Assembly: GCF_001194135.2 (NCBI RefSeq) | Contig: NC_068987.1 | Span: 61,864,856 to 61,928,855 of the forward strand | Direction: 5' to 3' | Origin: Octopus bimaculoides | Lineage: Eukaryota | Length of the DNA stretch: 64,000 nt | Shown: positions 30,969 through 63,090 of the stretch, piece by piece | How positions within the stretch are numbered: the first letter of the stretch is position 1 | Layout of the letters: every line of letters starts with the position of its first letter | Made by a program: the position numbers and the translations under genes | The notes under the pieces: model-generated | The model's input: only the letters and a program-made list of their open reading frames with translations | What the model was told of the DNA's origin: nothing | Database searches by the model: none

Positions 30969-33900
30969 ATGTTACGTTACTTCAGTCATGTAACCACATG
31001 TGCTTTTCTTGGACTATTTTTTTCCTTCTCCGGGCCTTTCATCTCTCCTCTTTCTGACAAAAAGCCATTCTTGAAACATTATACACCTCCTCTTTTTCCC
31101 ATCTTATACTGAGTGTCAAGCTAATACATTCCATGTGTACATCCTTTTCACTTTTGTTGTTTTGTTATTTGTTATTTTGAATTTTCGATTTGTATATATG
31201 TATGTATATGTGTGTGTGTGTATGTGTGTGTAAGTGTGTATCTTTCTCTTCTGTGTTCTACCATCTTTAAAAATTACTATGTTGACAACAGCTTCTGTTT
31301 ATTTGCTTATGAACGTGATTATGTTGAATATGGTGCACAATTTTGTATTTCAGTTTGAGAAATATGCGAAGCAAAATACTCATCAGACCTTAGACTTGAA
31401 AGGTTTGGTGCGGAATTTGGTCCTAGTAGAAGATTTTGTAAGTTGAATTTATCACTATTCAGCATTTAAAAAAATTTTCTTTTTCTGAATTTATAAAGAA
31501 TTTATTTACATTTATATTAATTATCATTTTTTTTATAATATATATTTTACATTCTTAATTATTAAAATAAACTTCAGTATAACATCTTAATACAGTATCT
31601 GAGAAACCAGATTTTATTATTCATTCCATTCTCCCATGTACACAGCAAATAAATATTTAGAAAATTAGAAGAAAAAAGTACAAATTAAATTTCTGTTTTT
31701 ATTATCTTTAAACATCTGAATGTTGCTGTTGGCTAAGTTAATTTGACAATGAACAACCACCTGGAAGGCTTATATTTTGTAGATGTGCCAACCCCATAAC
31801 CAGAATATGTAACATATACCTGGTCTAGTTCTCTTCCTTGTAAATAGGTACAGTGATGGCTTAATGCTTGAAACTTTAAGCAGCAGAAGCATTGTAAATC
31901 TGATTATTGTTCTTTTTAATTTCCAGTAGTGAGTTCATAGTCTCTATTGGATGCTATTTGGAGAGCTGTGAGTTTTACTCTGCTGAATAGACAGTTTTCT
32001 TTTCTATAATCCAAAATGCTTGGGGAAACAGAAATGCATGCACATGCACGCACACACACGTGCGTGCACGCATGCGCTCGCCATCTTTATATGTTTATGA
32101 GTAAATAAAAGTATGATAATGGTATGAGTGGGTTTAAACTTACTGTTGTGTCCTTGTTATCTATTACTATTTTACATATTCTTAATTTTAAATTCTTTGA
32201 GATAAACCATTTCATTTCAGATGAAATAAAGTTTAATTGCATCATACCATTCTATTTTTCTTTCTCAGTGGAAGAGTATTCAGAAGATGGAATATTTGGG
32301 AAAAGTTTTTACCAACTGGAATGACATAAGTGATCAGATAAGGAATTTTAATCCACAGTCTTTTACAAATGGTTCTGTTAATTCTACTGCTATTCTTAAC
32401 AGCATTAGTAACATATTCTGTGGTCGAAATACCACTTTAGAGTTTTCTGGCTACCAGCAGTCAAAAATTGCCCAAAGGTTGCAGGATTACAGGAGCCGGC
32501 CATCTGTGGAAAAGAATTTAGATGATCTGGATGATACAGTATGTAAGTAAAGTAACATTACTGTGCTATGACATTCTTATTAGAGAAACATTTTTACTTC
32601 TATGTTTTTTTTTCATTAATTTTTTTTATAGAAATATTATGTTGATTAAATAGGAAAGGATTCATAGAAACAATAGAATAATTGGACATAATTGCTTCAC
32701 ATTATGTAGTCTTGTCCTCCTACATATATTCAATTTTGTTGAGCATATTTCATCATCATCATTATTATTTAGCAAGGGCATCCAGCTGTAGAAACTCTGC
32801 CAAATTAGATTGGAGCCTGGTGTTGCCATCCGGTTTCACCAGTCCTCAGTCAAATCGTCCAACCCATGCTAGCATGGAAGGCGGACGTTAAACGATGATG
32901 ATGATCCTTATTCCATTCTGATTTGGGTGGGGCCAATATTTAGATTTTTACATCAGTTCTGAAATCAAATCTTACCAAGGTTGTTTTTACTCTTGATCCA
33001 TTTTAATGCTATAAGATATGTACCAGTTGCAAAGTGGAATCTTTTCAGTCCATTGCCAATAAAGGTTTTCCTTTTCAGTTTGTTGAAAAAATCATTATTG
33101 ACTCAGAATCTTTTGCATTATTAAGGGTTTTAAGTATCTTACCTATAAAAATATGAAACATAATTATACTGGAGGAAAAGCAATATGTGCACACACACAC
33201 ACACACACACTTTTATGTATACATATTGATTTATTAAATCTAATCTGTTTTAAAACATGTAATAATTACTTGTGAAAATATTCTTGTATCGTTAAAAGAC
33301 TTTTTTCAAAATTGAACTAAACAAAAGAATTGATACACATTTTAATTTGCTGTTATAATTTACAGTTTTGTATTGTGCAAACTATAAGAAACATTTCTGT
33401 TATTGCAAAAGAGAAGTAAGTCATGAAGATAGTGAAAATAATATGATTATAGAATAGATGTTTTTATTGTATTTTGTTTGGTATTCAGACTAAATACTAT
33501 AAAGCATTTGGTCTACCATTTTATTTTTCACCATTTTGACCTCTTACATTTTCATAATTACAATTAATCATTCTGAAATTAAATCTGTGTAGAGAAGAAC
33601 TTTCTCTCCTTATGCCCAAGACTTGAGTCAAGTCTGTTGTGAATTAGTCATGGCCTGGCCAATAATGGCCAAAACCAATCTAAATTATCTAAGTTATACT
33701 CTCTCTCCTTTAAAACTTTGATTAATAATAATTTTATTTGACTGTACTTAGCAAAAGAAATAATTATTACAAACAAGAAGCTTTTATTGGATATAAGTAC
33801 AAATCTATAGAAGTTTCAAAATTTTCTCTAAAATTTGTCTTAATTAGTTGAAAATTTATTTGATTTGAAAATGTTCATCTCAATGTATAATTATATTTCA

Positions 33901-36103
33901 GCTGATTTCTATAAAGATGTTATGAAATCTCTTGAGAATAATCCCTTAACTCGCTTTTTATGGAAAAATGTGATAAAATCTGTCATGTTAGGGGTAATAC
34001 CCTATGCTCCTGATGCTCCCATTGTCAAGAAGATTATAAAGAAGGCAAGTATTATCTCTTGGGTTTCTAAATATGAAAGAGCTAATGAATTTTTCTTTTA
34101 ATTTTTTAAATAAATAGTTGTTTGTGAATTTATCACATTTATGATTTCCTGGAAATCAATCAAACAGTTCCAAAAGAATGACTTATAGTTTAAGGTCTAA
34201 ATGTCAATAAAGCAACAATTAACGTATTAACTAATAACAAAAACCACATCATAATGGAAGAGTCGTGCATGTAATGGTACCCAAAATATACTGTGAGACC
34301 TCTAGAAGATTAACAATGAATCTGGATTTGCAATGTACTAGATGTGACTATTCCATGTTGTTGGCACCATTATTGTTTTTATGTCATGCAATCTTTATTT
34401 GATTCTTTACAAAGGTTTCACTTTTTTCTACATGTTTCTTCAGATTCTTGATTTGAAATATTAGAATGTTGTGTGACATGTGTATTTTCAGTAAAAACAG
34501 AGATTGAAAATAAATCCAATTATTATTAAGTTACCGTAATCCTTTCCTTCAGAAGATTCTTCTTAACTGTTTTTGTACTATATTTCTGCTAAAATACAAT
34601 GTCTTTTTTTTTTTTTTTTTTTTGTTAATTTTGAAAATAATGAAGAATTTAATAAAATAACTTTATCATTTCTAAAATGGTGTTTGAAACTTAAATTAAC
34701 ATGAAATATCAATGAAAATTTTAATTTTGATCACTTTAAATAGTAAGTTTGTATCTTAAAACCAGGGATAGTTTCAGATGGATTGGTATCAAAATAAAAC
34801 AAATCAATATAATTGAAACTTTATGACTCTCATAACATTGTGAAAATTTATAAACATTTTGATTAATGCAAACAGGAAAGACACGTTATTTTTATCTTTG
34901 AATAGAATGTTTCTTTTCTTAATTTGGTCAAAAAGAAAAAATCTCTGAATATATATGAATAATTATGTGAGAAGTGGACTTTTGACATAAAGTGTAACAT
35001 ATAAATATTTTCTAAGGAATATATTTATGTGTTGATTTAAGAAACTTAGATAAGAAAATTGAAAAATGTTTATATAGATAAGCTTGTACATCTGATCAGT
35101 TTGTATGGTTGATTTTCTTTTACATTCATTAATAGTAAACTGAGCAAAAAATGAAACAGTGTGTTTTTTAGAGTATAGAAAGTTCAAGAAAAATAATGTT
35201 ACGTTTTTGTCTATACACGGTTATACTAGATGTCTGAGATGTTTTCAATGGGATTGAACCTAGAATCACATGATTGTGAAACAAACTTCTTTACCAAATG
35301 GCCATGATTTCAGCCATGTTACATACAAGTCATATGTAATGTATATTGAATATGTAAAGTGGTGAGCTGACAGAACTGTTAGCACACCAGGCAAAATGCT
35401 TAGCAGCATTTCGTCTACCTATATGTTCTGTGTTCAAAATCCACTGAGGTTAACTTTGCCTTCTATTCTTTCATGGTCAATAAAATAAGTACCAGTTGGG
35501 CACTGGGGTTATGTAACTGACTCACCTATTCCCTCAAAATTGTTAGCCTTGTGCCAAATTTTGGAACCAATATATGGAGAATGTCTGTCATCTTTACTGG
35601 AGATGTGGTTCATGTTCCACAAACAGCTTTTGACTTTTCTATCCTCCGAGGTTTCTTAACCCATTATTTACATTCTGTTATTTAGAGCTTTATCTGCTTC
35701 GAGTTTCACTGTTCCAAAAAGAATTATTTCACATCTCTCAAAATTTATAATTTCTTATGATGTAAACAATAAAAACCCTCTTCGGTCATGAATGACCATG
35801 AGATTGCACCTAGAAAGTTCTCCACCAAGGCACAAGTCTGGGCAAGGTTGTTTATGGAAGGCCAGCAGTCACCCATGCATACCAGTCTCTCTTTTCCATG
35901 CTACTGATGTTATCCAAGGGAAAGACAAAGGCCAATATAGTTTGGCACCAGTGATGTTGCAACTCATTTCTACAGCTGAGTGAACTAGAACAACGTGAAA
36001 TAAAGTATCTTGCTCAAGAACACAACTTACAGCCTGGTCCAGAAATTGAATTCACTACCTCATGATTGTGAGCCCAACACTCTAACCACTGTGCCATACA
36101 CCT

Positions 36104-36145
<42 letters not shown>

Positions 36146-37712
36146 ATAATTTGTCACATGGAATCAGTTGTCTGGCTAATGAGGAGAATGAGAGATAAAA
36201 GTGGGATATTCACTCTTTACTGTCCATATGCCTTTGATAAAAGAAGTTTTGCAAAGTAAACAGAACAGAGCTACAAATTAAATCTGAGTATTTGATTTTC
36301 TGAGAACTAATTCACTGACATGATTTAGAAATATATTGAAAGGTGTGGCTGTGTGGTAAGAAGTTTACTTCTCAACCACATGTTTCCAGATTCAGTCCCA
36401 CTGTGTGGTGCCTTGGGCAAGTGTCTTCTGCTATAGCCTCAGGCCAACCAAGGTCTTGTGAGTGGATTTGGTAGACGGAAACTGAAAGAAGCCCATCATA
36501 TATCTGTGTGTGTATCTTTGTGTCTATGTTTCTCTCCCACTGGTGTTGGTGTGTCTAAGTCCCCATAACCAAGCAGTTCAGCAAAAGATACCAATAGAAT
36601 AGGTACCAGTCTTAAAAAGAGATTAAGTACTGGGGTTGATTAGCTCAATTAAATTCTTCAAGGCGGTGCCCATCATGGCTGCAGTCTAATGACTGAAACT
36701 TGTAAAAGATAAAAGATCAAGATATTAGGTGGTTGGCTACAGTACAAGATATACATTGGTATAATCAAAAATCATTTTCAAAATATACATTTTGTTACAA
36801 TTATATCAATATTTTTAGTGCATGAAATTGTAAAATATTTTAAAAGAATAAATGATCTTTAAACTTTCAGGCAAGTGAAGGCTTTGAAAATATAAGAAAC
36901 ATTTTCAGCGAACTGGTTGAAATTGCAAATAATCCTGATAATATTATTAAGAATTTGCGGAACCTCAGTAAGATACTGGTAAGTGGATTTTACAATAAGC
37001 ATATATGTTTATGGTTTATTTTATACTGTCAACATATAAGGCAATACTAGCTGAATAAAAATGTATTCTAAGTTAATAGTGGAAAGTGCCCATTTTAGAA
37101 ATCATCATCATCATCATCGTTTAATGTCCACTTTCCATGCTGGCATAGGTTGGACGGTTTGACTGAGGACTGGTGGACCAGATGGCTGCACCAGGCTCCA
37201 ATCTGATCTGACAGAGTTTCTACAGCTGGATGCCCTTCCTAACGCCAACCACTCCGAGAGTGTAGTGGGTGCTTTTATGTGCCAGTCAGGTGGTACTGGC
37301 AACAGCCACACTCAAATGGTGTTTTTTATGTGCCACCTGCACAGGAGCCAGTACAGCAGCACTGGCAACGACCTCGCTCGAATGTTGTTTTTCACATGCC
37401 ACCGGCACAAGTGCCAGTAAGGCGACACTGGTAACGGTCACGCTCGAGTGGTGCTTTTTACATGCCACCGGCACAGGAAAACAAAAGAAAATAAAGAAGG
37501 ATATGAGGATGTGTAGCCTCAGAGATGAGATGATATACTTTGGAGATGAATGAAAATGTATTGTATTGCAGATGGTCTGGCCTAACTCATGTCTGCATAA
37601 TCAAAAGGACTGTTGAAACAATACTGAAGATGACAGATGCTTAGAGAATCATACTGAGTGATTATATCTATCTATGTACCTATCTATCTATCTATCTATC
37701 TGCCTATATATA

Positions 37713-37763
<51 letters not shown>

Positions 37764-38308
37764 GTATAAGTATATATATCTTTATATATGTATATATATT
37801 GGACACAGAATGTGTGTCATTAGTCAGCTGGAAGAGATGTCTTCCTGGGGCTATAAACGTCAGTAACACAGTCCGGTATAGGACACCACACTTGGTTGGC
37901 AATTATACATCTTNNNNNNNNNNNNNNNNNNNNNNNNNNNNNNNNNNNNNNNNNNNNNNNNNNNNNNNNNNNNNNNNNNNNNNNNNNNNNNNNNNNNNNN
38001 NNNNNNNNNNNNNNNNNNNNNNNNNNNNNNNNNNNNNNNNNNNNNNNNNNNNNNNNNNNNNNNNNNNNNNNNNNNNNNNNNNNNNNNNNNNNNNNNNNNN
38101 NNNNNNNNNNNNNNNNNNNNNNNNNNNNNNNNNNNNNNNNNNNNNNNNNNNNNNNNNNNNNNNNNNNNNNNNNNNNNNNNNNNNNNNNNNNNNNNNNNNN
38201 NNNNNNNNNNNNNNNNNNNNNNNNNNNNNNNNNNNNNNNNNNNNNNNNNNNNNNNNNNNNNNNNNNNNNNNNNNNNNNNNNNNNNNNNNNNNNNNNNNNN
38301 NNNNNNNN

Positions 38309-38374
<66 letters not shown>

Positions 38375-41300
38375 CGTATATATATATATTTGTATGTATG
38401 TATGTGTAACCTCCATCAAAAATCTTGTCATAACTTGCCTGACTTTTCTGAACATTCAGGTGAAACAGAATAACAAGCGACTGACTTAATTGTATTTGTG
38501 TATGTGTGTTGTGAGGAGACCATATATAACTAATAATGCTTTCCCTTTTGTAAAAAATTGGCAAGTTAATTAATGCATGAAGAAATACTTCAGTAAGAAA
38601 TAACTTCCAGAAGCCAGAAAATGTAGAGAAGAAGGATGGCATATGTAAAACCAGTGTTATTTCTAGAGTAATACAATATCTGTGGGGAGTGGTATTTGAG
38701 CACGATTTCTATAAAAACTCATGTTATTAAAAGAGAAAAGACTATTGTAATATTAACAATAATAAAAGCAACATAAATTATTATGCAAAATAAATCAAGC
38801 AAAAACAGTGCAGCACAAACAAAATACATTATAGTATATTGTTTTTGACCTTGATTCCAATTTTATCCAAGTTTGTCCTTTGCATTTTTGTACTTGATAG
38901 AAATAAGTATCAGTTATATATTAAAGGAGATTGATGGGATGTAGTCATTATTCCCACCAAATTCAATGATTTGCTTTGTGTCTAACTAACAAAAATCAAT
39001 AATTACTCAAAAGGAATCATTAATAAGAGAAAATACGGAAAAGTCAGGACATGATATTGAGGGCAATGTGTATATATCAACAAGAACAATATCCCTGTGA
39101 AGTAAAGGGCATCTTTTAGTATGTCAGCATGCTGTAACATATATGGAAATAGCATTTTTTATAGAGCTTTCATTGGAAGCTTGTTTATAGCTAGTTTTGG
39201 GGTATGACTTCAAACTGCATCCAGTAGTGGTGCCCTGGTTTGGAAGTTTCTGGGTTTTGTGGAGTGTGGAACCACCTCTTAGCCATGATTGTTTCTCTGA
39301 TCCAGAGAAGTAGCCTCTGTCTGGGTCCCAGCTTTAGGTTAATTAACATGTAGTAGCAAGTGGGTGGGTCAGAGGCCAGTTTCTTCAGCTCAGTACAGCA
39401 ACTTGCCTAAAGAAAAAATGTTGATGTAAGAACCTATGACCTGAGGACCTCACTGTCACAGTCCCAGCTCTCTAGGCCATGGCAATTGAACTCTGAATGT
39501 AAGAGATGGGACAGTACTGCACACTCTGCACTCCACAAAAATTTCCATTGCTCTGGCCTGAGAATATGTCCACGTCCATAACCTCCCTCCTCTCCTTCTC
39601 AAGTCCTGTTCCATAATTACTCAGGGTTAATATTTCAAATGGGGCTAAGGCAGTGAGCTGGCAGAATCATTACCACACCTGAAAAAATGCTTATTGGCAT
39701 TTCTTCTGACTTTATAGGGTCAGTTTTGCCTTTCATCCTTTCGGAATCAATACAATAAGTACCAGTTGCACACTGGGGTTGATGTAATCAACTTACCTCC
39801 TCCCCTGACATTGCTGGCTTTGTGCCAAAATTTGAAACCAATATTTCAACTGGAGCTGAAGAAGCATTTGAGTTATTGAAATGTAATTTTGATCATGTGA
39901 TAACCTATGCAGAAATATTATTGATGTGGGAAGTCTTTATGATATGCATAGGAATTTAAGTAACTTGAAGTGGAAGTTATGGAAAGTGCTGGATGCTATA
40001 ATTTTAATTGTTAAATGTCACCAGATTAAATCCATTGTCCACCAGTTATATGATATTAGACTTAGACATACATCTGTCACTAAACCTAGGACTTATAGAA
40101 TCAGAGCCTAACCTGGTTTCTGTGGCATATACGACACTGCATGGTTAACTTCCCAACTGTTGATGAAACTCATTACTATCTGAATGAACTAGAGCATTGT
40201 GAAATGAGTTGTTTTACTCAAGAATACAATGCACTATCCTGTCATCGTCATCATTTAACATCTGTTTTTGATGCTGGCATGGGCTTGACAGTTTGACAGG
40301 AGCTGGCCAGCTGAAGAGCTGCTCAGGCTCCATGTTTGTTTTGGCATGGTTTCTATGGCTAGATGCCCTTCTTAATACCAACCACTTTACAGAGTGTACT
40401 GAGAGCTTTTACGTAACACCAGCATGAGTGCTTTTATGTAACACTGGCACAGGTGCTGTTTATGTGGCACTAGCATCCTTGAACCCACAAGATTAGGATT
40501 GTTCAGCTGAAGAGAGAAATCAAAGCCATAATCTTACAATCATTAGTACAGTACCCTAACCAGTAGGCTACATATCTTTGTGATATGATTTGATGCAAAT
40601 TCTTGATGAGTTCCTAAATAGATGAAGTAGAGGACTGCATTGAATTTCATACATAAGTAGAACCCTAATATTAGGTAGGAAAAAAAATGAGATTGTGATC
40701 ATGATCATCATCATTTAATGTCTGTTGTCCATGATGGCATGGATTGGATGTTTTGACCAGAACTGGCTAGCTGGAGAGCTGCACCAGGTTCCAGTCCGAT
40801 TTGGCTTGGTTTCTATGGCTGGATGCACTCTTCCTAATGCCAACCACTTTACTGTGTGTGCTTGGTGCTTTTACATGGCACCACATGAGCACTTTGACAC
40901 GACACCAGCATGAGTGCTCTTTTTACATGGCACCAGCACAGGACTCTTGCAGGCCAATCCTCTTCACCATGGAGAATGGCTTTAACACTTCTGCTGTGGA
41001 GTACAGGTGTTCTTGAGTAAGCATGGGGTCTTCATTGAACTACAAACCTAAAAATTGTGAGTTCATTACTACTGCAAGTATGTCAATGCATTGTGTCTCT
41101 ACACTTTGATTATTTTATTTTTGTTTAATTAACTGTTTAGAATATATAAGAGATCCTCTGGAAATCTTATCTTTGACAGATGGCCATTGTACAAAATCCA
41201 CAACTAAATGTCAGTTTTATGAATTACATGTTTTATGAGAAGAAAATTGTTAGAAAAACATACTCAGAAAGACATAATGTAACGGAAAATTACACACTTA

Positions 41301-44300
41301 TTAAATATTTGTTGAACTCGAAGTGACATGACTAATAATATTAAAATATTTAATGAAACTTATAATGTTATCAATGAATATTAGAAGTAATTTCATGAGT
41401 TCATACTTAAATATATTATATTTTCCTTTCTATCTTCATTTCAGACTTTACTTTGCTCTTCTGACAATCAGCAAATAAATTCATCTCCATTCCTTCAAAG
41501 AGATTTCATTGATTCTCTTAGTTTGTGCCAAAGTAACGTAACCAAATTTTTTATGATGACAAAAGAAAATAAAGAAAATATTTCAAGGTATACTTGGGAA
41601 AAAGCTCTGAACAATACATTTTATCTTGTGAAGATTTTGGACCAGTATTCTAAGGTAGTTATCATCTTTATAATATTGTTTATTTGTTTGTGTAGTCCAT
41701 AAATTTTTTTCTAAAACAAAACAACAGAAAGGTTTTTATTATTGTAGTCTTAAAAACAAGCCCTTTTGTTTTACATTACCTCCTGTACATTTCTGGATCC
41801 TGGAACTCTCAAAACAAGAATTTTGATATGTTATCAGCAAAGAGAAGTAATTTCCCCTACAAAAAAGTGACTATAGGAAATTGTGCATGGGAATGTAAAA
41901 ATTTTGAGTGCTCAAAGTAGATGGAACCTGTGGAGAAAAACAAGGATCAAAGTGGTGAAGACTGGTCCCAAGATACTGAACCTCATAAAAGGAATGACTA
42001 GGAACAAAAATTATTGGCAATGTGCAGTGCTGCGGAAGACTTGTTCTCCTTTCCAAGTGTTGCACACAGAGCACTAAAATGTGGAGTAGTGATGGTGGCT
42101 CAGATGCCCTTGCTGAACTAATCCTCTATCCACATCACCTCTGCAACACCTTCCTGCCTTTCTTTCACTGACCCTCTCCCTCAGCTTTACCACTGTCTCA
42201 ATACCATCTCATCTTTCTCTCTTTCTTTCTCTCTCTTTCTGTCTTCCACACTACTTCTACAACACCGACAGCTCCCACGTCATTCTTTCTCTAACCTTCT
42301 GCCCTTAGTTTCTCTATCTCCTCAACACTCTCTCACCAGTCTCTATCCTACACCTCTTTTACCATCACTGCACCTGCTCACATTCATCTATATAACATAG
42401 AATAGCCCTGGACCTCTGCACTTCCCCTGCCTATCATCCTTAACACACATAATCCTTTATTTTGTTGGCAACACTGGGTACTTTTCCAGACGTAACTGAA
42501 TGTGATATTATCCCATGTCAACATAAAAGAAAGGCTATGAAATGATTATGGTGGTGGTGATAGTAGCAGTGGTAGTGGTTGTTATTATTGTTGCTGTTAC
42601 ATTATCTGGAAATAGCTGTTATTATTGTTGCTGTTACATTATCTGGAAGTGGTTGTTTCTTAAAATATTGAAAAATATAATTTCCTGTGATTCTTATTTC
42701 TTAAATAGAAAATTTTAAAAAACTAATTGCTTTTTTACTTTTTATATGATTTTTTTTTTTTTTTTTATCAATTTGGACATGCATCCCCTCTATAGTTTTT
42801 GTTGACAGGAATATAATATGCCATTTCAGAATTTTGAAAGTTAGATTCTGTATCATTTACTACACAATTTGAATCTGTCTGTAAAGCCTTCCACATCATT
42901 TAAACTATAATATTCTTAGAATTTCACAAATTTTGAAGTTGTTTAAGATCTCTTTCTTGTTCCGGTAGATTTATTTCTTGTACATTGCCAGTACACTGAC
43001 TTAGTTTCACTTCAGTATTAGATAATCACAGCTGGCAGAATCGTTAACATGCAAGGCAAAATGCTTAGCAGTGTTTCATCCACTGGTACATTCATCATCA
43101 TCATCATCATCATCATCATCGCTGTTTAACGTCCACTTTCTATGCTGGCATGGGTTGGACAGTTTGACTCAAGACTGGCAAGCCAGAAGGCTGCACCAGG
43201 CTCCAGTCTGATCTGGCAAGGTTTCTACAGCTGGATGCCCTTCCTAACACCAACCACTCTGAGAGTGTAGTGGATGCTTTTTGCATGCCACCGGCATGAA
43301 GGCCAGTCAGGTGTTACTGGTATTGACCACACTTGAATGGTACATTTTACATGCCACCGGCACAGGACCAGTCAAGCAACACTGGCATCGACCATACTCA
43401 AATAGTGCTTTTTTATGTGCTACCGACACAGGACCAGTCAGGCGGCACTGGCATCAACCACGCTCGAATGGTGCATTTTATGTGCCAGTCAGGCGATATT
43501 GGTATCAGCCACGACAGTGACTTCACTTGAGTCAACAGGTCTTCACAAGCACAGTTTATTGCCCTATGATTGAAGGATACTCTTAAATGGGCTGGTTATG
43601 CTGCACTGACGTAGGCCACGGTTATAGTCTTCCTTGGCTTCCTGAGTCTTCTCAAGCACAGCATATCTCCAGAGGTCTTGGTTACTAGTCATTTCCTTGG
43701 TGAAGCCTAATGTTCGAAGGTCATTCTTCACCACCTCATCTCATGTCTTCCTAGGTCTACTTCTTCCACAGGTTCCCTCTACTGCGAGAGTGTGACACTT
43801 TTACACACAGCTGTCCTCTTCCATGCACAACACATGACCATACCAGTGCTGTCATCTCTCATGCACACCACATCTGATGCTTCTTACGTCCAACTTCTCT
43901 CAGGGTGCTTACACTCTGTCATGTATGCTCACTGAGATTACAATTCCAGCAGAGCATACTAGCTTCATTTCTTTCAAGCTTATGCATGTTCTCAACTGTC
44001 ATGGCCCATATTTCACTACCGTGTAGTATGGCTGTTCGCACACATACATCATACAGTCTACTTTTCACTCTGAGTGAGAGGCCCTTTGTCACCAGCAGAG
44101 GTAGGAGCTCTCTGAACTTTGCCCAAGTTATTCTTATTCTAGCAGCTACACTCTCAGTGCATCCACCCTCACTACTGACCTGGTCACCCAGGAAACAGAA
44201 GCTATCAACTACTTCTAGTTTTTACCCATGGCATTTGACACAAGCTATTTTCTGCACATTTTCAGTGTCTATTGCCACTGAGCATTTGCCACACACAAAA

Positions 44301-46139
44301 ACTATCTTCCCAGTTAACCTTCCTTTGATATTGCTGCACCCCTTATGTCTCCATTCTGAGTTGAAATTCTGCTGAGGTTACTTTTTATCCTATCAGGGTT
44401 GATAAAATAAGTATCAGTTGAGCATTGGTGTTGATGTTATCCACTTATTCTTTACCCTAAAATTGCTGCCTTTGTGCCAAAATTTAAAACCAATGTTAGA
44501 TAATCATATGCACAACAACATCATGTACAATTAATTTATAGACATGGTGTAATGTAACTGACACCTGTGCCATGTTAAATGATTGGCACTTGTGTTGGTG
44601 GCATGTAAAAAACACTCACTACACTCTTGGAATGGTTGGCATTAGGAAGGGCATCCAACCATAGAAATCTAGCCAAATCAGACTGGTACCTAGTGCAACT
44701 CCCTGGATTACCAGTTCTCATTTAAACTGTCCAACCCATGCCAGCATGGTAAACGGACAGTAAATGATGATGATGTAATTCAAAATCACTTAATATATTT
44801 AATAAATACTATGTACTATGAATGTATGGTCTTTACACTAAATCTTTCTTGGAGCAGTTGAGAAAAAAGATGAGAAAAAAATCATGGTTGGAAAGGATTT
44901 ATTTTAATCAATGAAATTATAAAAATTAAAAGAAATACTTTTCTAGGAAGACTGAGGAATGTTCTACATATGAAGTCATTACAAATTGATTGTTAATATA
45001 ATTATTAATTAATTAATTGATTAGTTAGCAGAAACTGGCAGATGCCAGACTAAATGCCTTGTGGTACTTAAATTTATCCCTCTATACTCTGAGCTCAAAT
45101 CCTGCTGAAGTTTCTTCTTTGACTTTTATCCGTTTAGGGTTAATAAGTACTGATAATATGCAGGGCTTGATCGAATTTTTCTCCTGCTTTTCAACTACAT
45201 GGTCTCAGATTTGCTCCCACTGTGTGGCACCTTGGGCAAGCATATTAGCACCAAGCTAATCAAAGCCTTGTGAGTGGATTTGATTGATAGAAATTACAAG
45301 CAGCTGTTGTGTGTGTTTGTGTGTGTGCACGCACGTGCGTGCATGTGTTTGTATCCTTCTCTTGACATTGCATCAAACTAGCAGTGCTGTTTGTTTCTGG
45401 TATTTTGCCAAGAATATATCGCATCATGAGGAAATATTTATTACCTTACTTGGAAACAAGTGAGACTTGACAACTGGAAGGGTATTCAGCCATTGAAAAC
45501 TGCCTCAAACAAACTCCATCTGATCCAAGGAAGGATGGAAAAAGTGGATGTTAAATGATGATGATGATGCCCAGCTAAAAGAAATCAATATGATTACTTA
45601 CAAACAAATATCTAGCACGAAAAATGTTGCATATAGGAAAACAATAATGGAGTTTGTATGTAACATCACAACTCATATTTAACTTAGATACGGGACACTG
45701 AATATTTTTTATATGATCTATATTCTCTAACATTCTATATCTTAGGTTTAGTTGATAGCTTCTTTATAATGTTTTAACTTTAATTTCTAAAATGTGACTG
45801 ATATAAATAAAAAAAAATTATAGGTGCAGGCTTGGCTGTGTGGCAAGATGTTTTGTTATGTCTCAAGCTACTGCTATCTAGCACCTTCGGATAATCTCTA
45901 CTCAACTGCTACTCAACAGCTCTACCCAACAGTCACTCAATTCCTCTAACACGGCTAGACTACCTCTATTTATATGTCTTGCACGATCCTACTTCTTTGC
46001 TTGGGGGCGTCAACACAACATGTTTACAACTGAGTTCAGTCCCACTGCATGACACTGAGGGCAATTGTTTACTACTATAACCCTGGACTGACCAAAGCCT
46101 TGTGAGTGGATTTGGTAGATGGAAACTAAAAGAGGCCTG

Positions 46140-46201
<62 letters not shown>

Positions 46202-49120
46202 ATGGAAGAAGTGATGCACATAAACACAGTTAGGTTTGACATATATATGCATATATATGCATTGTATATACGAATATGTTTACATAGAGGATAAAAAATA
46301 TAGAATACTAAGAAGAGAATACATAATTTCTTAACTCAGCAACTGTTTCAGGAAGCTTGGAGTTATGCAATAATTTTAATGTTCATAATTTGCCAATGGA
46401 ATGTGCAAAAAGTAACATTCACATGAAGATTTTACAAGTCCAACCATTTGTTATGCTTTGTCTGCAGAGTGGTTGGTGTTAGGAAGAGAATCCAGCCATG
46501 AAATCCCTGCCAAAGCAGACACAGTAGCCTGGAATAGTTTTTCTGTCTGGTTGACTGCTGTCACCTGTCCTACCCATGCATGGAAGATGGATGTTAAATG
46601 GTGATGATGATGATGATATATAGACAAGCGTAGCTTTTTCTATGTGTGTGTGTGTGGGGGGGGGCACTGTGTAGCAAGAAGCTTGCTTCCCAACCACATG
46701 GTTCTGGGTTCAGTCCTACTGCATGACACCTTGGGCAAGTGTCTTCTACTTTAGCCTCAGCTGACTAAAATTTTATAGGCACAAGAGTGGTTGTGTGGTA
46801 AGTAGCTTGCTTACCAACCACATGGTTTCAGGTTCAGTCCCACTGAAGTGTCTTCTACTATAGCCACGGGCTAACCAAAGCCTTGTGAGTGGATTTGATG
46901 GACAGAAAGCTGAAAGAAGCCTGTCGAATATATATTTGTATATATATATGTATGTGTGTCTATATGTTTGTGTGTCTGTATTTGTCCCTCCCAACATCAC
47001 TTGACAACCGATGCTAGTGCCTTTATGTCCCCTTAACTTAGCAGTTCGGCAATAGAAACCAATAGAATAAGTACTAGGTTTACAAAGAATAAATCCTGAG
47101 GTCGATTTGCTCGACTAAAAGCAGTGCTCCAACATGGCCACAGTCAAGTGACTGAAACAGCTAAAAGAATATATATGTATGTATGTATGTATGCATTATC
47201 TGCATCACTACCTCCATATCAACTCATCCTAGATTTCTTTTATAGACACTCTTGATGCCATGAACCAAGTCCTGGATGGAGAATTCAGAGTTTAATCTAA
47301 ATTCATTTGAGCACAATACTCCATATTTTCTATACTGAGAATAGCTAACCCCCACCTATTGTCTGTATGTGTGTGTGTGTGTGTTTATATTTGTCTTCCA
47401 CCACAGGTTCACAGCTGGCATTTGTTTCTTTATGGTCCAATATCTTAGCAGTTCAGCAAAAGAGACTGATAGAATAAGTACCAGGCTTTAAAAAATAAAC
47501 GCTAGGGTTGATCCATTTGGCTAATCTTTTCAAGGCAGTGCTCCAGCATGGCAACAGTCCATGTAAAGCAAGTAAAGGCTAAAGATAGAATATTGCAATT
47601 GATCTAGTTTTGGTAAAGAAGAAAAGTATCTACAAGCAAAGGCAATTCTTTACCAAATTTTCTGGAATGCTGCTTGATAAAGAAAATGTATTTTATATTT
47701 TTACTGTTCCATAAAGCCTGAAAAATTAAGATATATTATTATCATTATCACCTTATCAGGTTTTTAGTAATAATTTATTTATCAAAAATAAGAAAATAAA
47801 TAATTTGAAATTAGAACAAAAAGGATATTTTAAACTGTTTTAGCAGTAATTTATTTATTTACGTATTTATTTGTTTGTTTATTAATTTATAATACAAAGC
47901 AAACATTTCAGAAATTGCTTGCCTTTATCATCTACAAATATAAAAAGAAAGTTGTTATTGGTTATTATTTTAAGTATGAAACCTCATGAATTATTGTTGC
48001 AATTATATAGGTGTTTAAGAAGCTAGATTATTGATCATATATTTTTAAACTTTGTAATCGCCATTCTTTCTTTGTATAGTTTGTCAAAACGTATTCTTTG
48101 TTTGCTTCTTTAATGTCTATTTTGTTATTTTAGCTTAGAAAGTAAAGAATTAGAATGAATACCATAAAGCATTTTGTCTGATGCTTTAATGATCCTGCCA
48201 GCTTGCTGCCTAAATAACAATAATAATGATAATAATAATAATAATAATAATAATAATAGGACATTGGGTGTGTCTAGCCAAGTCACTGTAACAAACATGC
48301 AGATTAAAAGTAAATAATAATAATAATAATAATAACCCTTTCTGTTGGAACCACAAGGCCTCAAATATGGGGGAAGGGATTAAGTTGATTACATCAATCT
48401 CAGTGTGTAACTGGTACTTATTTAACTGACTCCGAAAGGATGAAAAGCAAAGTCAACCTTGGTGGAATTTGAACTCAGAATGTGAAGATGGATGGCATAC
48501 CACAAAGCATTTTACCCGGTGTGCTAATGATTCTGCCAGCTTGCCACAACAACAACAATAATAATAAATAAATAAATAAATAGATGCCTTGATGCAGTAC
48601 CAGGCACTGGCTTTCATGGCTTCTGATCTTAACTGATTGAAAGTGTTATCATATACATGTTTTGTCTTGTTATAAAAAGATGAGCTACAGCAAATATTTT
48701 GCTCAATATCACAGATTTGTTTGTCCTTAACCAGTTGAGCATGTCCCTTAGTGGCTGACATCTCTGATCAATAGCAGAAGTAGTGGAGGAGCATCATAGC
48801 CATGTGTTGAGAGGAATTCTTTGGGGTTTGAATAATTCACCTCTGGAAACATGGATGTTTCATTCATCATTCTTAAACAAACTTTATTCAGAGACCTCTT
48901 GAGTGGGATGGGCCACTCAACCAGAAGAAAATTCTAACTGGACCCCTGCCTGCATGGTCATGCGCTGTTTATCTTGATATGAGATCACTATGTCTTGCAC
49001 ATATGGTTGTGATGCATGTGGCTTGTGTACCTTATCTGATGGGTAGTCATGATGGGTATATTGGACTTCATATATTTGTATCCCGGTGTCACTTTGATGG
49101 CATGCACTGGTCTCTCACTC

Positions 49121-49151
<31 letters not shown>

Positions 49152-50201
49152 GTTTCAAATTTTGGCACAAAGCCAGCAATTTCGGGAGAAGGGTTAAGTC
49201 AAATACATTGACTCCGGTGTTCAACTGGTACTTATTTTAATGACCCCAAAAGGATGAAAGCAAAGTCAACCTCAGCAGAATTTTAACTCAGGACATAAAG
49301 GTGGAAGAAATGCTTTTTTGCCCGGTGTGCTAACAATTCTGCTGGCTCACCACCTTAATAATATTAATAACTTCTTCTACTATGGGCACAAGGCCTGCAA
49401 TTTGTTGGGAGGGAGATAGTCGATTACATCAACTCCAGTCTTCAACTGGTACTTATTTTATCAACCCCAAAAGGATTAGAGGTAAAGTCAGCCTCAGCAG
49501 AATTTGAACTCAGAATGTAAAGATGGATGAAATGCCACTAAGCATTTCGCCTGGTGTGCTAACCATTCTGCCAGTTTGTCACCTTCTTAATAATAATAGT
49601 AATAATAATCCTTTCTACTTTGGGCACAAGGTCTGAAATTTTTGGGAAAGGGGCTGTGCGTAACTGGTACTTATTTCATTGACCCTGAAAGGATGAAAGG
49701 CAAAGTCGACCTCAGTAGAATTTGAACTCAGTTTCTATCTACCAAATCCACTCACAATGCTTTGGTTGGCCAGAGGCTATAGTAGAAGACATTTACCCAA
49801 GGTGTCATGCAGTGAGACTGAACCCAGAATCATGTGGTTGGGAAGCAAACTCCTTACCATACACCCTATTTACAATCATGAAACATTTAAATTATGCCTT
49901 TGAAATATCATAGCAGGGAAGTAAAAGGTGGTGTGACTGAAATTATCTATTCTGGCACAACCAATATTACAAGAATTTGAAATCATGGTATACTCTTTAC
50001 TCTTTACTCTTTTATTTGTTTTAGTCATTTGACTGTGGCCATGCTGGAGCACCGCCTTTAGTCGAGCAAATCGACCCCAGGACTTATTCTTTGTAAGCCT
50101 AGTACTTATTCTATCGGTCTCTTGCCGAACTGCTAAGTTACGGGGACGTAAACACACCAGCATCGGTTGTCAAGTGATGTTGGGGGGACAAACACACACA
50201 T

Positions 50202-50258
<57 letters not shown>

Positions 50259-51428
50259 CATACATATATATGACGGGCTTCTTTCAGTTTCCATCTACCA
50301 AATCCACTCACAAGGCTTTGGTCGGCCCGAGGCTATAGTAAAAGACACTTGCCCAAGGTGCCACGCAGTGGAACTGAACCCGGAACCATGTGGTTGGTGA
50401 GCAAGCTACTTACCCCACAGCCACTCCATTAAATGTTAAAATTCTGTCAGGTTATGGTTAATAAAGATTGGAAATATTTTACTTATAAAGAAATTAAAAA
50501 CCATCATTTCTAACAAATCAAAAGTAATCATTCAGATGTTAGTTAGTCCATACAATTAGGAAGTTTTGATATTTGTATAATTTGACTAAAACATTTCCTA
50601 ACTTTGTCTTATTAGATATCGTGAATACAATATGTTGTCTTTATTTTCATTAATTTTGATTGACTGAGTTTTGAAAATTGGTATTAAAAAAAACCAAAAA
50701 CAATAGAGGAAATATATATTCTTTATTGCGTTATTAATGTTACATTCTCTAATTTGTATATTTATTATTTTTTTTTTTAGATGTTTGCAATTATAATGAT
50801 AGACCAACTCATGCAATTTTTATTTGTCTTTTTCTTTTACAAATGCTAGTATTTCAATTTTGATAAATTCAAGCCTTATCCAAATGAATCTGCCTTAGTC
50901 AAAGACAGTCTGCAGTTTGTTGAGAATGATACATTGCTGGCTGGTAAATATTACTTCAGTTTTTCTATTTTCTTTATTAGAGTTCAGTCTTTAAAGTTTA
51001 TAACTAATAGTTAAGGTTGATGTCTCATATCCTATTATTGTAGCTCTGCAGTGTGTTTTGTAACAACGTATAGAGTAACTCTTGATGAGTCAGTTGACAT
51101 AACTGTATATAGGTTTCACAGAGAACTTAAGTACAACCAGTTACTGTAAACAATGAGGCAACCATAGATTTATCAAATGTTTTAATAGCTTGAATAATGA
51201 CCTAATATATCATGAAAGATGAACTAATATATCATGAAAGATGGCCAAATATATCGTAAAAGATGGCTTGATATATCATGAATCATTCTCCCCTTTGATA
51301 AACGTGATATCATTATTGTTTTAATGTTCACATTTCCATGGAAGATTGGAAACAAATGACACCATGTGTATGATAGTGATGCTTACTAACAACTGACACA
51401 TGATATCATCAGAAGGAGACACACACAC

Positions 51429-60843: not shown

Positions 60844-63090
60844 AGAGACATGGCAGACTGGTAAGGAAATCTGTGAGGTTCCTCCTGCACTCCAGTCCAC
60901 TGGTTCCGCCCTCCCTCCTCCATGAAAAGCTGAGTGAAATGCTCCTGAAAGACCTTACACATCTCCTTGGGTTCATTTACCAAGTTCTCCTGTTGGTTCG
61001 TCAAAGACTGTATTGTGGCATCATTATCACATTGAGTCTATCACACAGGCCCAGCTGGTCACCTTGATTCCTTCCTGCCCCACTGCACGTTGCTTTGCCC
61101 TGACTATGCACCCCTTGTGTTTAGCTTCGAGGTGTTGTTTGAGAACCAGACTCACTGCCTAAACTTGGGATGCAGAGCCAGACCTCAGTGCCTCTTCTAA
61201 ATCCTTAGCTAAGTCCCTTTCTATTCTATTTTTCCTACCAATTAGCTCTTTACTATATCTAATGGACTTGAACTTTATGGTTCTGTTGAGGGCATACCAC
61301 CATTTGTTGTTTATTATGACATCAGTCAATGCCCTCATCACTAACAACCTAATCGAACTCTTCTACTCCTCATCAGCCAAAAGGGACTTGTTGAGTTTCC
61401 AGTAGCTAGGACCTTGCCTACGTAACTTATCTAAGTTAAACTTACAGGTTACAAGCTTGTGGTCATTGTAGTTGATGTAATGAAACTGTGGACCTCCTAA
61501 CTAAATCTTTATCTATATGTCTAACAAATGACCTGTCTATATAAGACCTAGAAGACCCGTTGCTATTCATCCATGTCCACAATGGAGCATCTGGATGTTC
61601 TAGTCTATACTGATCTGCCAGCTGAAAGTGCTTAAGCAGATTGAGGAGGCACAGGCTTCTCCTTCTATCCATACTCGAGCCAACACAATTTACGTGTGCA
61701 TTGCAGATTGTATTAAAGTCCCCTAATAACACTGAAGGATGTGGCATACCTAGAAATTTCTCTAGGCTTGAATGTCCAGCCCTCGGGGGAGCATAAATAG
61801 CCACCAGCCTGAAAGACTTACCACTGCTGTGTGTCACGTCAAGAATGACCAGCCTGCCCTCCAGATCTAAACCCAGATTTTTCCTGAACAGAACTGCTAC
61901 ACCCCTCCCCCCTCCAGGCTGGCTTGGAAAAATAAATTTCTCATAGCCGTTTAGGAGGGGAGAAAAGCCTTTCAGTCCATTCAGCCAGGTTTCTGTAACT
62001 ACTATCACATCCAATCTATACGACCTGAGGTCATTGAGGAAATGCCCTTGTTTCCAATTCAGCCCCAGACCATGAACATTTGAACACCCTATGTTGAGTG
62101 TAAACATGAAAAAAAATATAGATTTTACTTACCTTGGAATGAGATGGGCTAATGCCCATCTCATTCCATTTACTTTAGGGCTTGTGAGGTGTCTATGACA
62201 AGGCCCTCATAAATTTGAGGAGAAAAATCTTACCTCAGAGGGCCTACATCATATTTGAATTTTTTGTGGGGTGTGCATGAGATACTGGATGGCTGTGGGT
62301 ATATTTTAAAATATTTTGTAGCAGTATCATATTGTTGGCATTAATAGCCATTAAGTTTGTATCAGGGTTGGGACATGGGGTGGGGATTTGGTCTTTGATT
62401 TTTCTTTTTTGGTGTACTGGGGCTTGTGGGGATGGGATGGGGATTTTTTCTTTTCTCCCATTACAACAGTCCAATTAGTAACATCTTCAATTGTATCCTC
62501 CTCCGCCAGGGATATCCTTGGTGTTGGTGTTGTTTGTGATCTTAGTGTTAATGCCTCTGACGCCATTGATATTGCAGGTGTTTCCATTGTTGTTGGTATT
62601 CCTGGTGTTGTTGGTTTAGTTGCTTTTCCGACTGTTGCAGCCTTTTTGTTTCCCATTGCTTTCGCGGCAGTTGTGGGTATTGCTGCTTTCTCAGGGGGAG
62701 GAACATACTCGGCCGTGATGTGATCTTTTTGGCCACACTTGTAGCAACGTAGCTTCCTCCCCTCGACATTCACCTGCAGCTTACTTTCCTCCACCTGTAT
62801 GGTTTCCACAATTTCTTCTAGGTCGACAGAGGCTACTTGGACTATCATTTCTAGGCCTTGTCCCTGCCAATTCTGCTGTTCTAGTACAGTAGCTTGGAAG
62901 ATGGTGATTTTTTTCCTCCAAGCCTACCGTTATTGCTGCTACAAGCCAGGCAGCATCCCACCCTTATCCTGGAGGTATGCTTCCCAGAAAAGTGGGCAGA
63001 GGTACCACCTCAGATGTTTTAAGTGTCTCTGTGGAGTGCAGCCTGGTATTTTAGTACTGTGAATATTCCATTGTGCTATGTTTAATAGGT
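60844..63090 (-). mobile_element. L1/Tx1-clade LINE relic: ORF1 (zinc knuckle) plus APE endonuclease and linker; RT domain absent
   Basis: ORF1 CYKCGQKDHITAE; ORF2 NVHGL, ETWL, GVAVLF, AIYAP, LLGDFN, SYIDR, DHKLV, YWKLNKSLL; frameshifts present; 5' boundary approximate. Confidence 0.9.

What the first reader, a model, noticed from the sequence alone, without database searches (positions are those of the whole stretch)
33910..50852. Both cysteines of a conserved ABCA disulfide are encoded as TAT (Tyr): possible A-to-I editing-restorable disulfide
Seen: exon G reads S-D-F-Y(TAT 33910-33912)-K-D-V-M-K-S-L-E and exon J begins Y(TAT 50850-50852)-F-N-F-D-K. Gap-free local alignments place these Tyr on ABCA1 T-P-Y-C-N-D-L-M-K-N-L-E and C-V-N-L-N-K. 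Known (recalled): these are the partners of one ECD1 disulfide (ABCA1 C355-C504, ABCA4 C370-C519). Other ECD1 Cys are kept here (YVC/NNC, IFCG, PYPCY). A-to-I editing reads UAU as UGU (Cys), 5'-U is a favoured ADAR neighbour, and coleoids recode mRNA heavily. Inference: either editing at A33911 and A50851 restores the bond in a regulated way, or the pair was lost together. Caveat: TGT>TAT is a common single transition. It also removed the last Cys of the dead LINE zinc knuckle near 62707.
Basis: partly seen in the sequence, partly recalled or inferred. Interest (0 to 1): 0.82.

Follow-up and report, generated by a model that had tools for sequence, protein, structure and literature searches.

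The report
Octopus ABCA transporter lost one disulfide
An ABCA1-like lipid transporter gene in this octopus-like genome has replaced both cysteines of one conserved extracellular disulfide with tyrosines, and the RNA available shows no sign that editing turns them back, so this looks like an ordinary lineage-specific loss of a disulfide.

Summary
TAT 33910-33912 (exon G) and TAT 50850-50852 (first codon of exon J) align with ABCA1 C355/C504 and ABCA4 C370/C519, a disulfide resolved by cryo-EM. The N gap at 37914-38308 is intronic: RNA contigs join exons G-H-I-J with exactly the expected 461 nt. Cys is ancestral at both sites. At site 1, 33 of 34 informative homologues have Cys. A more distant relative (Logan contig from ERR3431203) has TGT at both sites, with the same exon structure. 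Three closer relatives share TAT. So both codons changed G>A in the octopus lineage.

The editing reading is not supported. Consensus RNA contigs show A at 33911 in 10 runs from 5 studies and at 50851 in 4 runs. Raw RNA reads were few (6 and 1) and none showed G. mRNA folding around both sites is no stronger than shuffled sequence. Low-level editing (below about 40-50%) remains untested. It could not restore much of the bond anyway, because both edits must fall on the same transcript.

Best reading: paired loss of a disulfide by two common transitions, in a gene that is expressed and correctly spliced. Interest is low.

The parts
10646..10787 (+). Upstream ECD1 exon encoding [28 protein letters not shown]. 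It keeps the equivalents of ABCA1 C75 and C81. The exon starts with GT of a split codon at the C54 position.
   Evidence: Edges are inferred from splice consensus and were not checked with RNA.
32260..32542 (+). Exon F. The 3' end is firm and the 5' edge was not determined. It holds IFCG, the ABCA1 C309 equivalent.
   Evidence: the loose-end sequence of the RNA contigs ends at 32542, followed by GTAAGT
33902..34044 (+). Exon G, 143 nt
   Evidence: RNA contigs of 10 runs
33910..33912 (+). TAT (Tyr) at the position of ABCA1 C355 / ABCA4 C370. The candidate editing site is A33911.
   Evidence: Relatives have TAT. The distant relative has TGT.
34045..36870 (+). Intron G-H with a GC donor (GCAAGT...cag)
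   Evidence: The six bases GCAAGT also begin exon H, so the joint is placed by splice consensus.
36871..36978 (+). Exon H, 108 nt
   Evidence: and the contig arithmetic
37914..38308 (.). Assembly gap (N), inside intron H-I. It has no effect on the coding sequence.
41445..41654 (+). Exon I, 210 nt. It encodes two Cys (TLLCSS, SLSLCQS) that are absent from ABCA1 but present in the distant relative L003.
50850..50943 (+). Exon J, 94 nt
   Evidence: RNA contigs
50850..50852 (+). TAT (Tyr), first codon of exon J, at the position of ABCA1 C504 / ABCA4 C519. The candidate editing site is A50851.
   Evidence: Relatives have TAT. L003 has TGT and L004 has TGC.
52617..52725 (+). Exon K (HVEYKIRMD motif)
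   Evidence: The 3' edge comes from splice consensus.
55470..55646 (+). Exon L (FPYPCY; this Cys is equivalent to the ABCA4 C641 that bridges to ECD2)
   Evidence: Edges come from splice consensus.

Best explanation
The window holds the 5' third of an expressed, correctly spliced ABCA1/4/7-type lipid transporter gene. In the lineage leading to this animal and its close relatives, both partners of the third ECD1 disulfide (ABCA1 C355-C504) changed from TGT to TAT by single G>A transitions. The bond is therefore absent from the protein as it is made. The likely path (inferred) is that one partner was lost first, which left a free thiol in a secreted-side domain. Loss of the second partner was then neutral or favoured. 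The two tyrosines, and possibly a lineage-specific extra Cys pair in exon I, now hold that part of ECD1 (inferred, not tested). RNA editing does not restore the cysteines at any substantial level.
For: Position homology: (E=6e-51). The disulfide is real in ABCA4 and ABCA1. Cys is ancestral. At site 1, 33 of 34 informative homologues have Cys, and the only Tyr is a close relative. L003 (ERR3431203) has TGT at both sites with the same intron positions. L004 has Cys at both sites. Tyr is fixed and shared. Genomic contigs of organisms D and J have TAT at both sites. L001/L002 (SRR11869390/1), which are 89% identical to the window across exon G and its flanking introns, have TAT at site 1. The gene is functional-looking. 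Transcript contigs of up to 7.3-7.5 kb (1.7-7.5 kb across runs) have word depths of 4-138 and exact exon joins. No majority editing is seen. Contigs show A at 33911 in X13, X14, X10, X5, X1, X3, X2, X4, X8 and X12, and A at 50851 in X13, X14, X5 and X3. Raw reads give 0 G of 6 at site 1 and 0 of 1 at site 2. mRNA folds around both sites have z-scores of -0.6 to +0.4 against shuffles. By my own arithmetic, G>A is one of only two non-synonymous transitions from TGT. Tyr at both partners would therefore be expected in roughly 1 in 10 double losses, and the window is AT-rich (GC 34.6%).
Against: Read-level depth was tiny, so editing below about 40% at site 1 is not excluded, and at site 2 any level short of a majority is not excluded. 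The tissues of the RNA runs are not known to me, so a neural-only or temperature-dependent signal could have been missed. A short imperfect hairpin spans the 3' splice site and the start of exon G in the pre-mRNA (z about -2.2 to -2.5) and could in principle be an ADAR substrate. The structural role proposed for Tyr-Tyr and for the exon I Cys pair is untested.
Confidence: 0.85

Rival explanations
1. Regulated restorative editing: ADAR edits A33911 and A50851, so that in some tissue or condition a useful share of the protein regains the C355-C504-type disulfide.
For: Both sites are potential restorative sites, with ancestral G and derived A. Both have a 5' U. A modest pre-mRNA hairpin overlies site 1. 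Restorative editing is a documented class in coleoids (PMC6881472).
Against: The consensus is A in all 10 runs at site 1 and all 4 runs at site 2. Raw reads give 0/6 and 0/1 with G. No structure is predicted around site 2 or in the mature mRNA. The two sites are 453 nt apart in the mRNA, so the bond needs both edits on one transcript. Partial editing would mostly produce proteins with a single unpaired Cys. The median restorative editing level in coleoids is below 2.5%.
Confidence: 0.04
2. Incidental low-level editing at one or both sites, with no functional role. It would be a by-product of the heavy editing activity of coleoid neurons.
For: If this is a coleoid, a few percent of coding A's are edited at low level (general knowledge; PMC12048591 text, PMC6881472). 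The tests here cannot see levels below about 40%.
Against: No G was seen in any read or contig. There is no strong duplex around either site. No ABCA entry appears in the stored, truncated part of one published recoding table for O. bimaculoides, which is weak evidence.
Confidence: 0.12
3. The Tyr/Tyr gene is one of two lineage-specific paralogues, and a sister copy keeps the Cys pair. The loss would then reflect relaxed constraint after duplication.
For: This was not examined directly. ABCA genes do duplicate often (general knowledge).
Against: The exon G search returned only one octopus-like hit (Tyr) and one more distant cephalopod-like hit (Cys). Exon structure and flanking exons of L003 match this gene one-to-one. 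The organism's own proteins seem to be absent from the libraries, so this is weak evidence.
Confidence: 0.08
4. Assembly or sequencing error at one or both codons.
For: The assembly is gappy, with 12 N runs in 64 kb.
Against: The same letters appear in RNA contigs of 10 runs and in genomic contigs of two other species. All sampled 31-mers of 50700-51100 are present in 11 DNA runs of this organism.
Confidence: 0.01

Closest known systems
Human ABCA1 and ABCA4 ECD1 disulfides (ABCA1 C355-C504; ABCA4 C370-C519)
   Same: The ECD1 fragment is clearly homologous (E=6e-51 and 2e-44). The other ECD1 cysteines are kept: the C75, C81 and C309 equivalents, and the PYPCY Cys.
   Different: Both partners of this one bond are Tyr here. 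Exon I adds two Cys that the vertebrate proteins lack.
Restorative (harm-permitting) A-to-I editing in coleoid cephalopods (Jiang & Zhang 2019, PMC6881472)
   Same: Both sites meet the sequence definition of potential restorative sites: the ancestor had G, the genome has A, and A>G would give back the ancestral residue.
   Different: No editing was observed. The known class is defined by observed RNA-DNA differences and mostly has very low editing levels. A disulfide needs two linked edits, which has not been described for this class as far as I know.
Disease-associated cysteine substitutions in ABCA4 (C54Y, C519R, C1490Y and others; PMC8501128, PMC7932691)
   Same: They are the same kind of change (Cys>Tyr by G>A) and involve the same bond (C519R).
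   Different: In humans a single-partner loss is pathogenic. Here both partners are replaced, the change is fixed in several species, and the gene is expressed normally.

Membership tests
ABCA1/ABCA4/ABCA7-type ABC transporter | Large first extracellular domain (ECD1) homologous to ABCA1/4/7 | tested here: met
   phmmer against PDB chains: ABCA1 6e-51, ABCA4 2e-44, ABCA7 2e-34, over about 350 residues
ABCA1/ABCA4/ABCA7-type ABC transporter | ECD1 cysteines of the C75-C309 bond, and C81 of the C54-C81 bond | tested here: met
   YVC..NNC at 10646-10787 and IFCG in exon F. The C54 codon is split across an intron, and only its last two bases (GT) are seen.
ABCA1/ABCA4/ABCA7-type ABC transporter | C355-C504 (ABCA4 C370-C519) disulfide | tested here: not met
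   Tyr at both positions in the genome and in RNA consensus
ABCA1/ABCA4/ABCA7-type ABC transporter | Two transmembrane domains, two nucleotide-binding domains and ECD2 | not tested
   These lie downstream of the window. Transcript contigs of 7.3-7.5 kb are long enough for a full-length ABCA.
Restorative A-to-I recoding site | Genomic A where the ancestor had G, so that A>G restores the ancestral amino acid | tested here: met
   TGT in L003 at both sites, TGC in L004 at site 2, and Cys in 33 of 34 homologues at site 1
Restorative A-to-I recoding site | High-level (majority) A>G in RNA relative to DNA | tested here: not met
   A in the consensus contigs of 10 runs at site 1 and 4 runs at site 2
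Restorative A-to-I recoding site | Any reproducible A>G in RNA reads | tested here: inconclusive
   Only 6 raw reads cover site 1 and 1 covers site 2, none with G. The 95% upper bound is about 39% at site 1.
Restorative A-to-I recoding site | Double-stranded RNA around the site | tested here: inconclusive
   mRNA z-scores are -0.6 to +0.4. A pre-mRNA hairpin at site 1 has z about -2.2 to -2.5. Nothing is predicted at site 2.
Restorative A-to-I recoding site | Host with extensive ADAR recoding (a coleoid) | not testable with these tools
   Organism names are coded. An octopus, probably O. bimaculoides, is my inference from the pattern of runs (2015 genome plus tissue RNA panel) and from the close relatives found.

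The most novel reading that the evidence does not exclude
The two G>A substitutions became fixed because ADAR editing already covered, or still covers, both sites. On this reading a fraction of transcripts in some neural tissue or at some temperature is edited at both A33911 and A50851, giving a conditionally formed ECD1 disulfide in a lipid transporter.
Probability: 0.04. Interest if true: 0.7.

Novelty: new variant of a known kind. Interest (0 to 1): 0.2.

Why it matters
As it stands, this is a small point of comparative protein evolution. A disulfide that is conserved from vertebrates to molluscs, and whose single-partner loss causes Stargardt disease in ABCA4, can be dispensed with when both partners are replaced. 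That may interest people who study ABCA ECD stability. If the editing reading were true, it would be the first case of a disulfide switched on by two linked recoding events. The evidence here points away from that.

Tried and rejected
1. The search for homologous proteins with the 372-aa spliced fragment returned nothing at E<=1e-5.
Site 2 in other species had to come from fetched contigs.
That call was counted.
4. The 2026 raw-read RNA runs (X55-57) are sampled at about 6%. They gave 6 reads at site 1 and 1 at site 2. The raw DNA run X51 gave none. The DNA contigs of X25 did not lay on exon J.
5. Published editing tables gave nothing usable. Birk 2023 and Liscovitch-Brauer 2017 are not held. 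The supplements of Albertin 2022 and Shoshan 2021 have no ABCA entries. The truncated recoding table of Zhang 2023 has no ABCA entry for O. bimaculoides. None of this is conclusive.
7. I considered that the exon I Cys pair was an octopus-specific compensation. I rejected this because the distant relative, which keeps the ancestral pair, has it too.
Full report
**What is there.** The plus strand of the window carries the 5' part of an ABCA1-like gene with long introns. I fixed the exons around the finding from the sequence and from transcript contigs of public RNA runs of the same organism.
- Exon G is 33902-34044.
- Exon H is 36871-36978.
- Exon I is 41445-41654.
- Exon J is 50850-50943.
- Exon K is 52617-52725 and exon L is 55470-55646.

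TAT 33910-33912 is the fourth codon of exon G ([12 protein letters not shown]). TAT 50850-50852 is the first codon of exon J (Y-F-N-F-D-K).

**The assembly gap.** The N run 37914-38308 lies between exon H and exon I. In transcript contigs of three runs (X14, X3, X5) the first base of exon G and the first base of exon J are 461 nt apart. That equals 143+108+210, the lengths of exons G, H and I. Nothing coding is hidden in the gap and the frame is continuous.

**Are the tyrosines at the cysteine positions?** Yes. A phmmer search of the spliced 372-aa ECD1 fragment against all PDB chains gives ABCA1 at E=6e-51, ABCA4 at 2e-44 and ABCA7 at 2e-34. The alignment puts the first Tyr on ABCA1 C355 and the second on C504. 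In ABCA4 these are C370 and C519. The ABCA4 C370-C519 bond is resolved in cryo-EM maps, and C519R is a disease allele (PMC8501128; PMC7932691). ABCA1 Cys355-Cys504 is listed among its four ECD disulfides in bioRxiv 10.1101/2021.05.23.445323. The other ECD1 cysteines are kept here.

**Which state is ancestral?** I searched exon G (47 aa) against 1.84 billion representative proteins and got 43 hits.
- Eight of these start after the position, and one is an unrelated long protein.
- Of the other 34, 33 have Cys. The single Tyr is P0001, an exon-sized ORF that is 83% identical to the window.
- P0001's contigs (L001/L002, Logan SRR11869390/1) are 89% identical to the window through the flanking introns and carry TAT.
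- P0003 lies on a 5.3-kb genomic contig (L003, Logan ERR3431203) that holds the homologues of exons F, G, H, I and J in order.
- L003 reads GAT TTT TGT AAA at site 1. Exon J begins cag|TGT TTT AAC TTT GAT AAG, so it has TGT at site 2, at the same intron position.
- An unnamed invertebrate contig (L004) has Cys at both sites, with TGC at site 2.
- Genomic contigs of two closer relatives (organisms D and J, about 95-98% identical) have TAT at both sites.

Both cysteines are therefore ancestral. Both were changed by a G>A transition, and the Tyr/Tyr state is fixed across several related species.

**Is the RNA edited?** Most public RNA runs of this organism are available only as assembled contigs. 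These report the majority letter and drop minor variants.
- At 33911 the contigs of ten runs from five studies all read A (X13, X14, X10, X5, X1, X3, X2, X4, X8, X12).
- At 50851 the contigs of four runs from four studies read A (X13, X14, X5, X3).
- No other mismatch to the genome occurs anywhere in exons G or J.
- Three RNA runs from 2026 are held as raw reads, but only about 6% of each is sampled and the gene is weakly covered. Six reads cross 33911 and one crosses 50851, none with a mismatch.

Majority editing is thus excluded in every run examined. The read-level bound is weak: about 39% at site 1 and none at site 2. I do not know which tissues the runs come from.

**Substrate and logic.** Folding ±100 and ±200 nt of mature mRNA around each site gives energies no lower than dinucleotide shuffles (z -0.6 to +0.4). 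In the pre-mRNA, a short imperfect hairpin spans the 3' splice site and the first 40 nt of exon G (z about -2.2 to -2.5). Nothing comparable is found at site 2. The two sites are 453 nt apart in the mRNA. A disulfide needs both edits on the same molecule. With independent editing at levels p1 and p2, only p1·p2 of the protein would regain the bond, while p1(1-p2)+p2(1-p1) would carry a lone cysteine in a luminal/extracellular domain. Restorative editing is a known class in coleoids, but its median level is below 2.5% (PMC6881472). At such levels, restoring a bond would be negligible.

**Best reading.** This is a paired, lineage-specific loss of one conserved ECD1 disulfide in a gene that remains expressed. 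Word depths are 4-138, transcripts reach 7.5 kb, and splicing is exact. Cys>Tyr is one of the two non-synonymous transitions available to TGT, and the genome is AT-rich (34.6% GC). By my own arithmetic, Tyr at both partners is expected in roughly one in ten double losses. How ECD1 copes is inferred only: the two tyrosines may pack against each other. Exon I also encodes two Cys (TLLCSS, SLSLCQS) that vertebrate ABCA1 lacks. These are not an octopus-specific compensation, because L003 has them too (TLFCT, DLCKT) alongside the ancestral pair. An extra bond in that subdomain could still have made the old one dispensable.

**Comparison with what is known.** The gene is an ABCA1/4/7-type transporter by ECD1 homology. 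It fails one conserved feature, the C355-C504 bond, and the rest of the protein lies outside the window. The two sites meet the sequence definition of potential restorative editing sites. They do not meet the defining observation of RNA-DNA differences at any level I could detect.

**Verdict.** The attractive editing interpretation is unlikely. The remaining uncertainty is low-level or tissue-restricted editing, which needs deep reads mapped to the spliced transcript.

Noticed in passing
window 34045-36870: The intron after exon G has a GC donor (AAG|GCAAGT) and a normal AG acceptor. The same six bases, GCAAGT, also begin exon H, so the joint is ambiguous by 6 nt in alignments. The distant relative L003 has a normal GT donor there (AAG|GTAAAA).
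   Followed up: partly
window 41445-41654 (exon I); L003 2928-3137: Exon I encodes two cysteines, 24 residues apart, that have no counterpart in human ABCA1. They are conserved between the window and the distant relative L003. This may be a lineage-specific extra ECD1 disulfide.
   Followed up: partly
window 62746-62705, minus strand: A retroelement zinc knuckle reads CYKCGQKDHITAEY (CX2CX4HX4Y).
   Followed up: yes
L004 10001-10522 (ENA metagenome contig ERZ26168041, unnamed invertebrate): The called ORF P0002 contains three tandem copies of the exon-G-like segment (..ILWTTLRPVVLGRIPYAPDTPAVREII..). This could be a tandem exon duplication or a set of mutually exclusive exons in that animal's ABCA gene.
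   Followed up: no
window 10646-10647: The exon with the C75 and C81 equivalents begins with GT, which completes a split codon at the ABCA1 C54 position (NGT). The upstream exon that supplies the first base was not located, and several N gaps lie upstream.
   Followed up: no
window, whole: There are twelve N gaps totalling 4107 bases, and many (TG)n, (TA)n and (TC)n microsatellites. One microsatellite abuts the gap at 38309-38390.
   Followed up: partly
L003 (ERR3431203), whole contig: This relative has exons F to J within 5.3 kb, against 18.7 kb in the window. Its contig is very AT-rich (25.8% GC), so its introns at this locus are much more compact.
   Followed up: no
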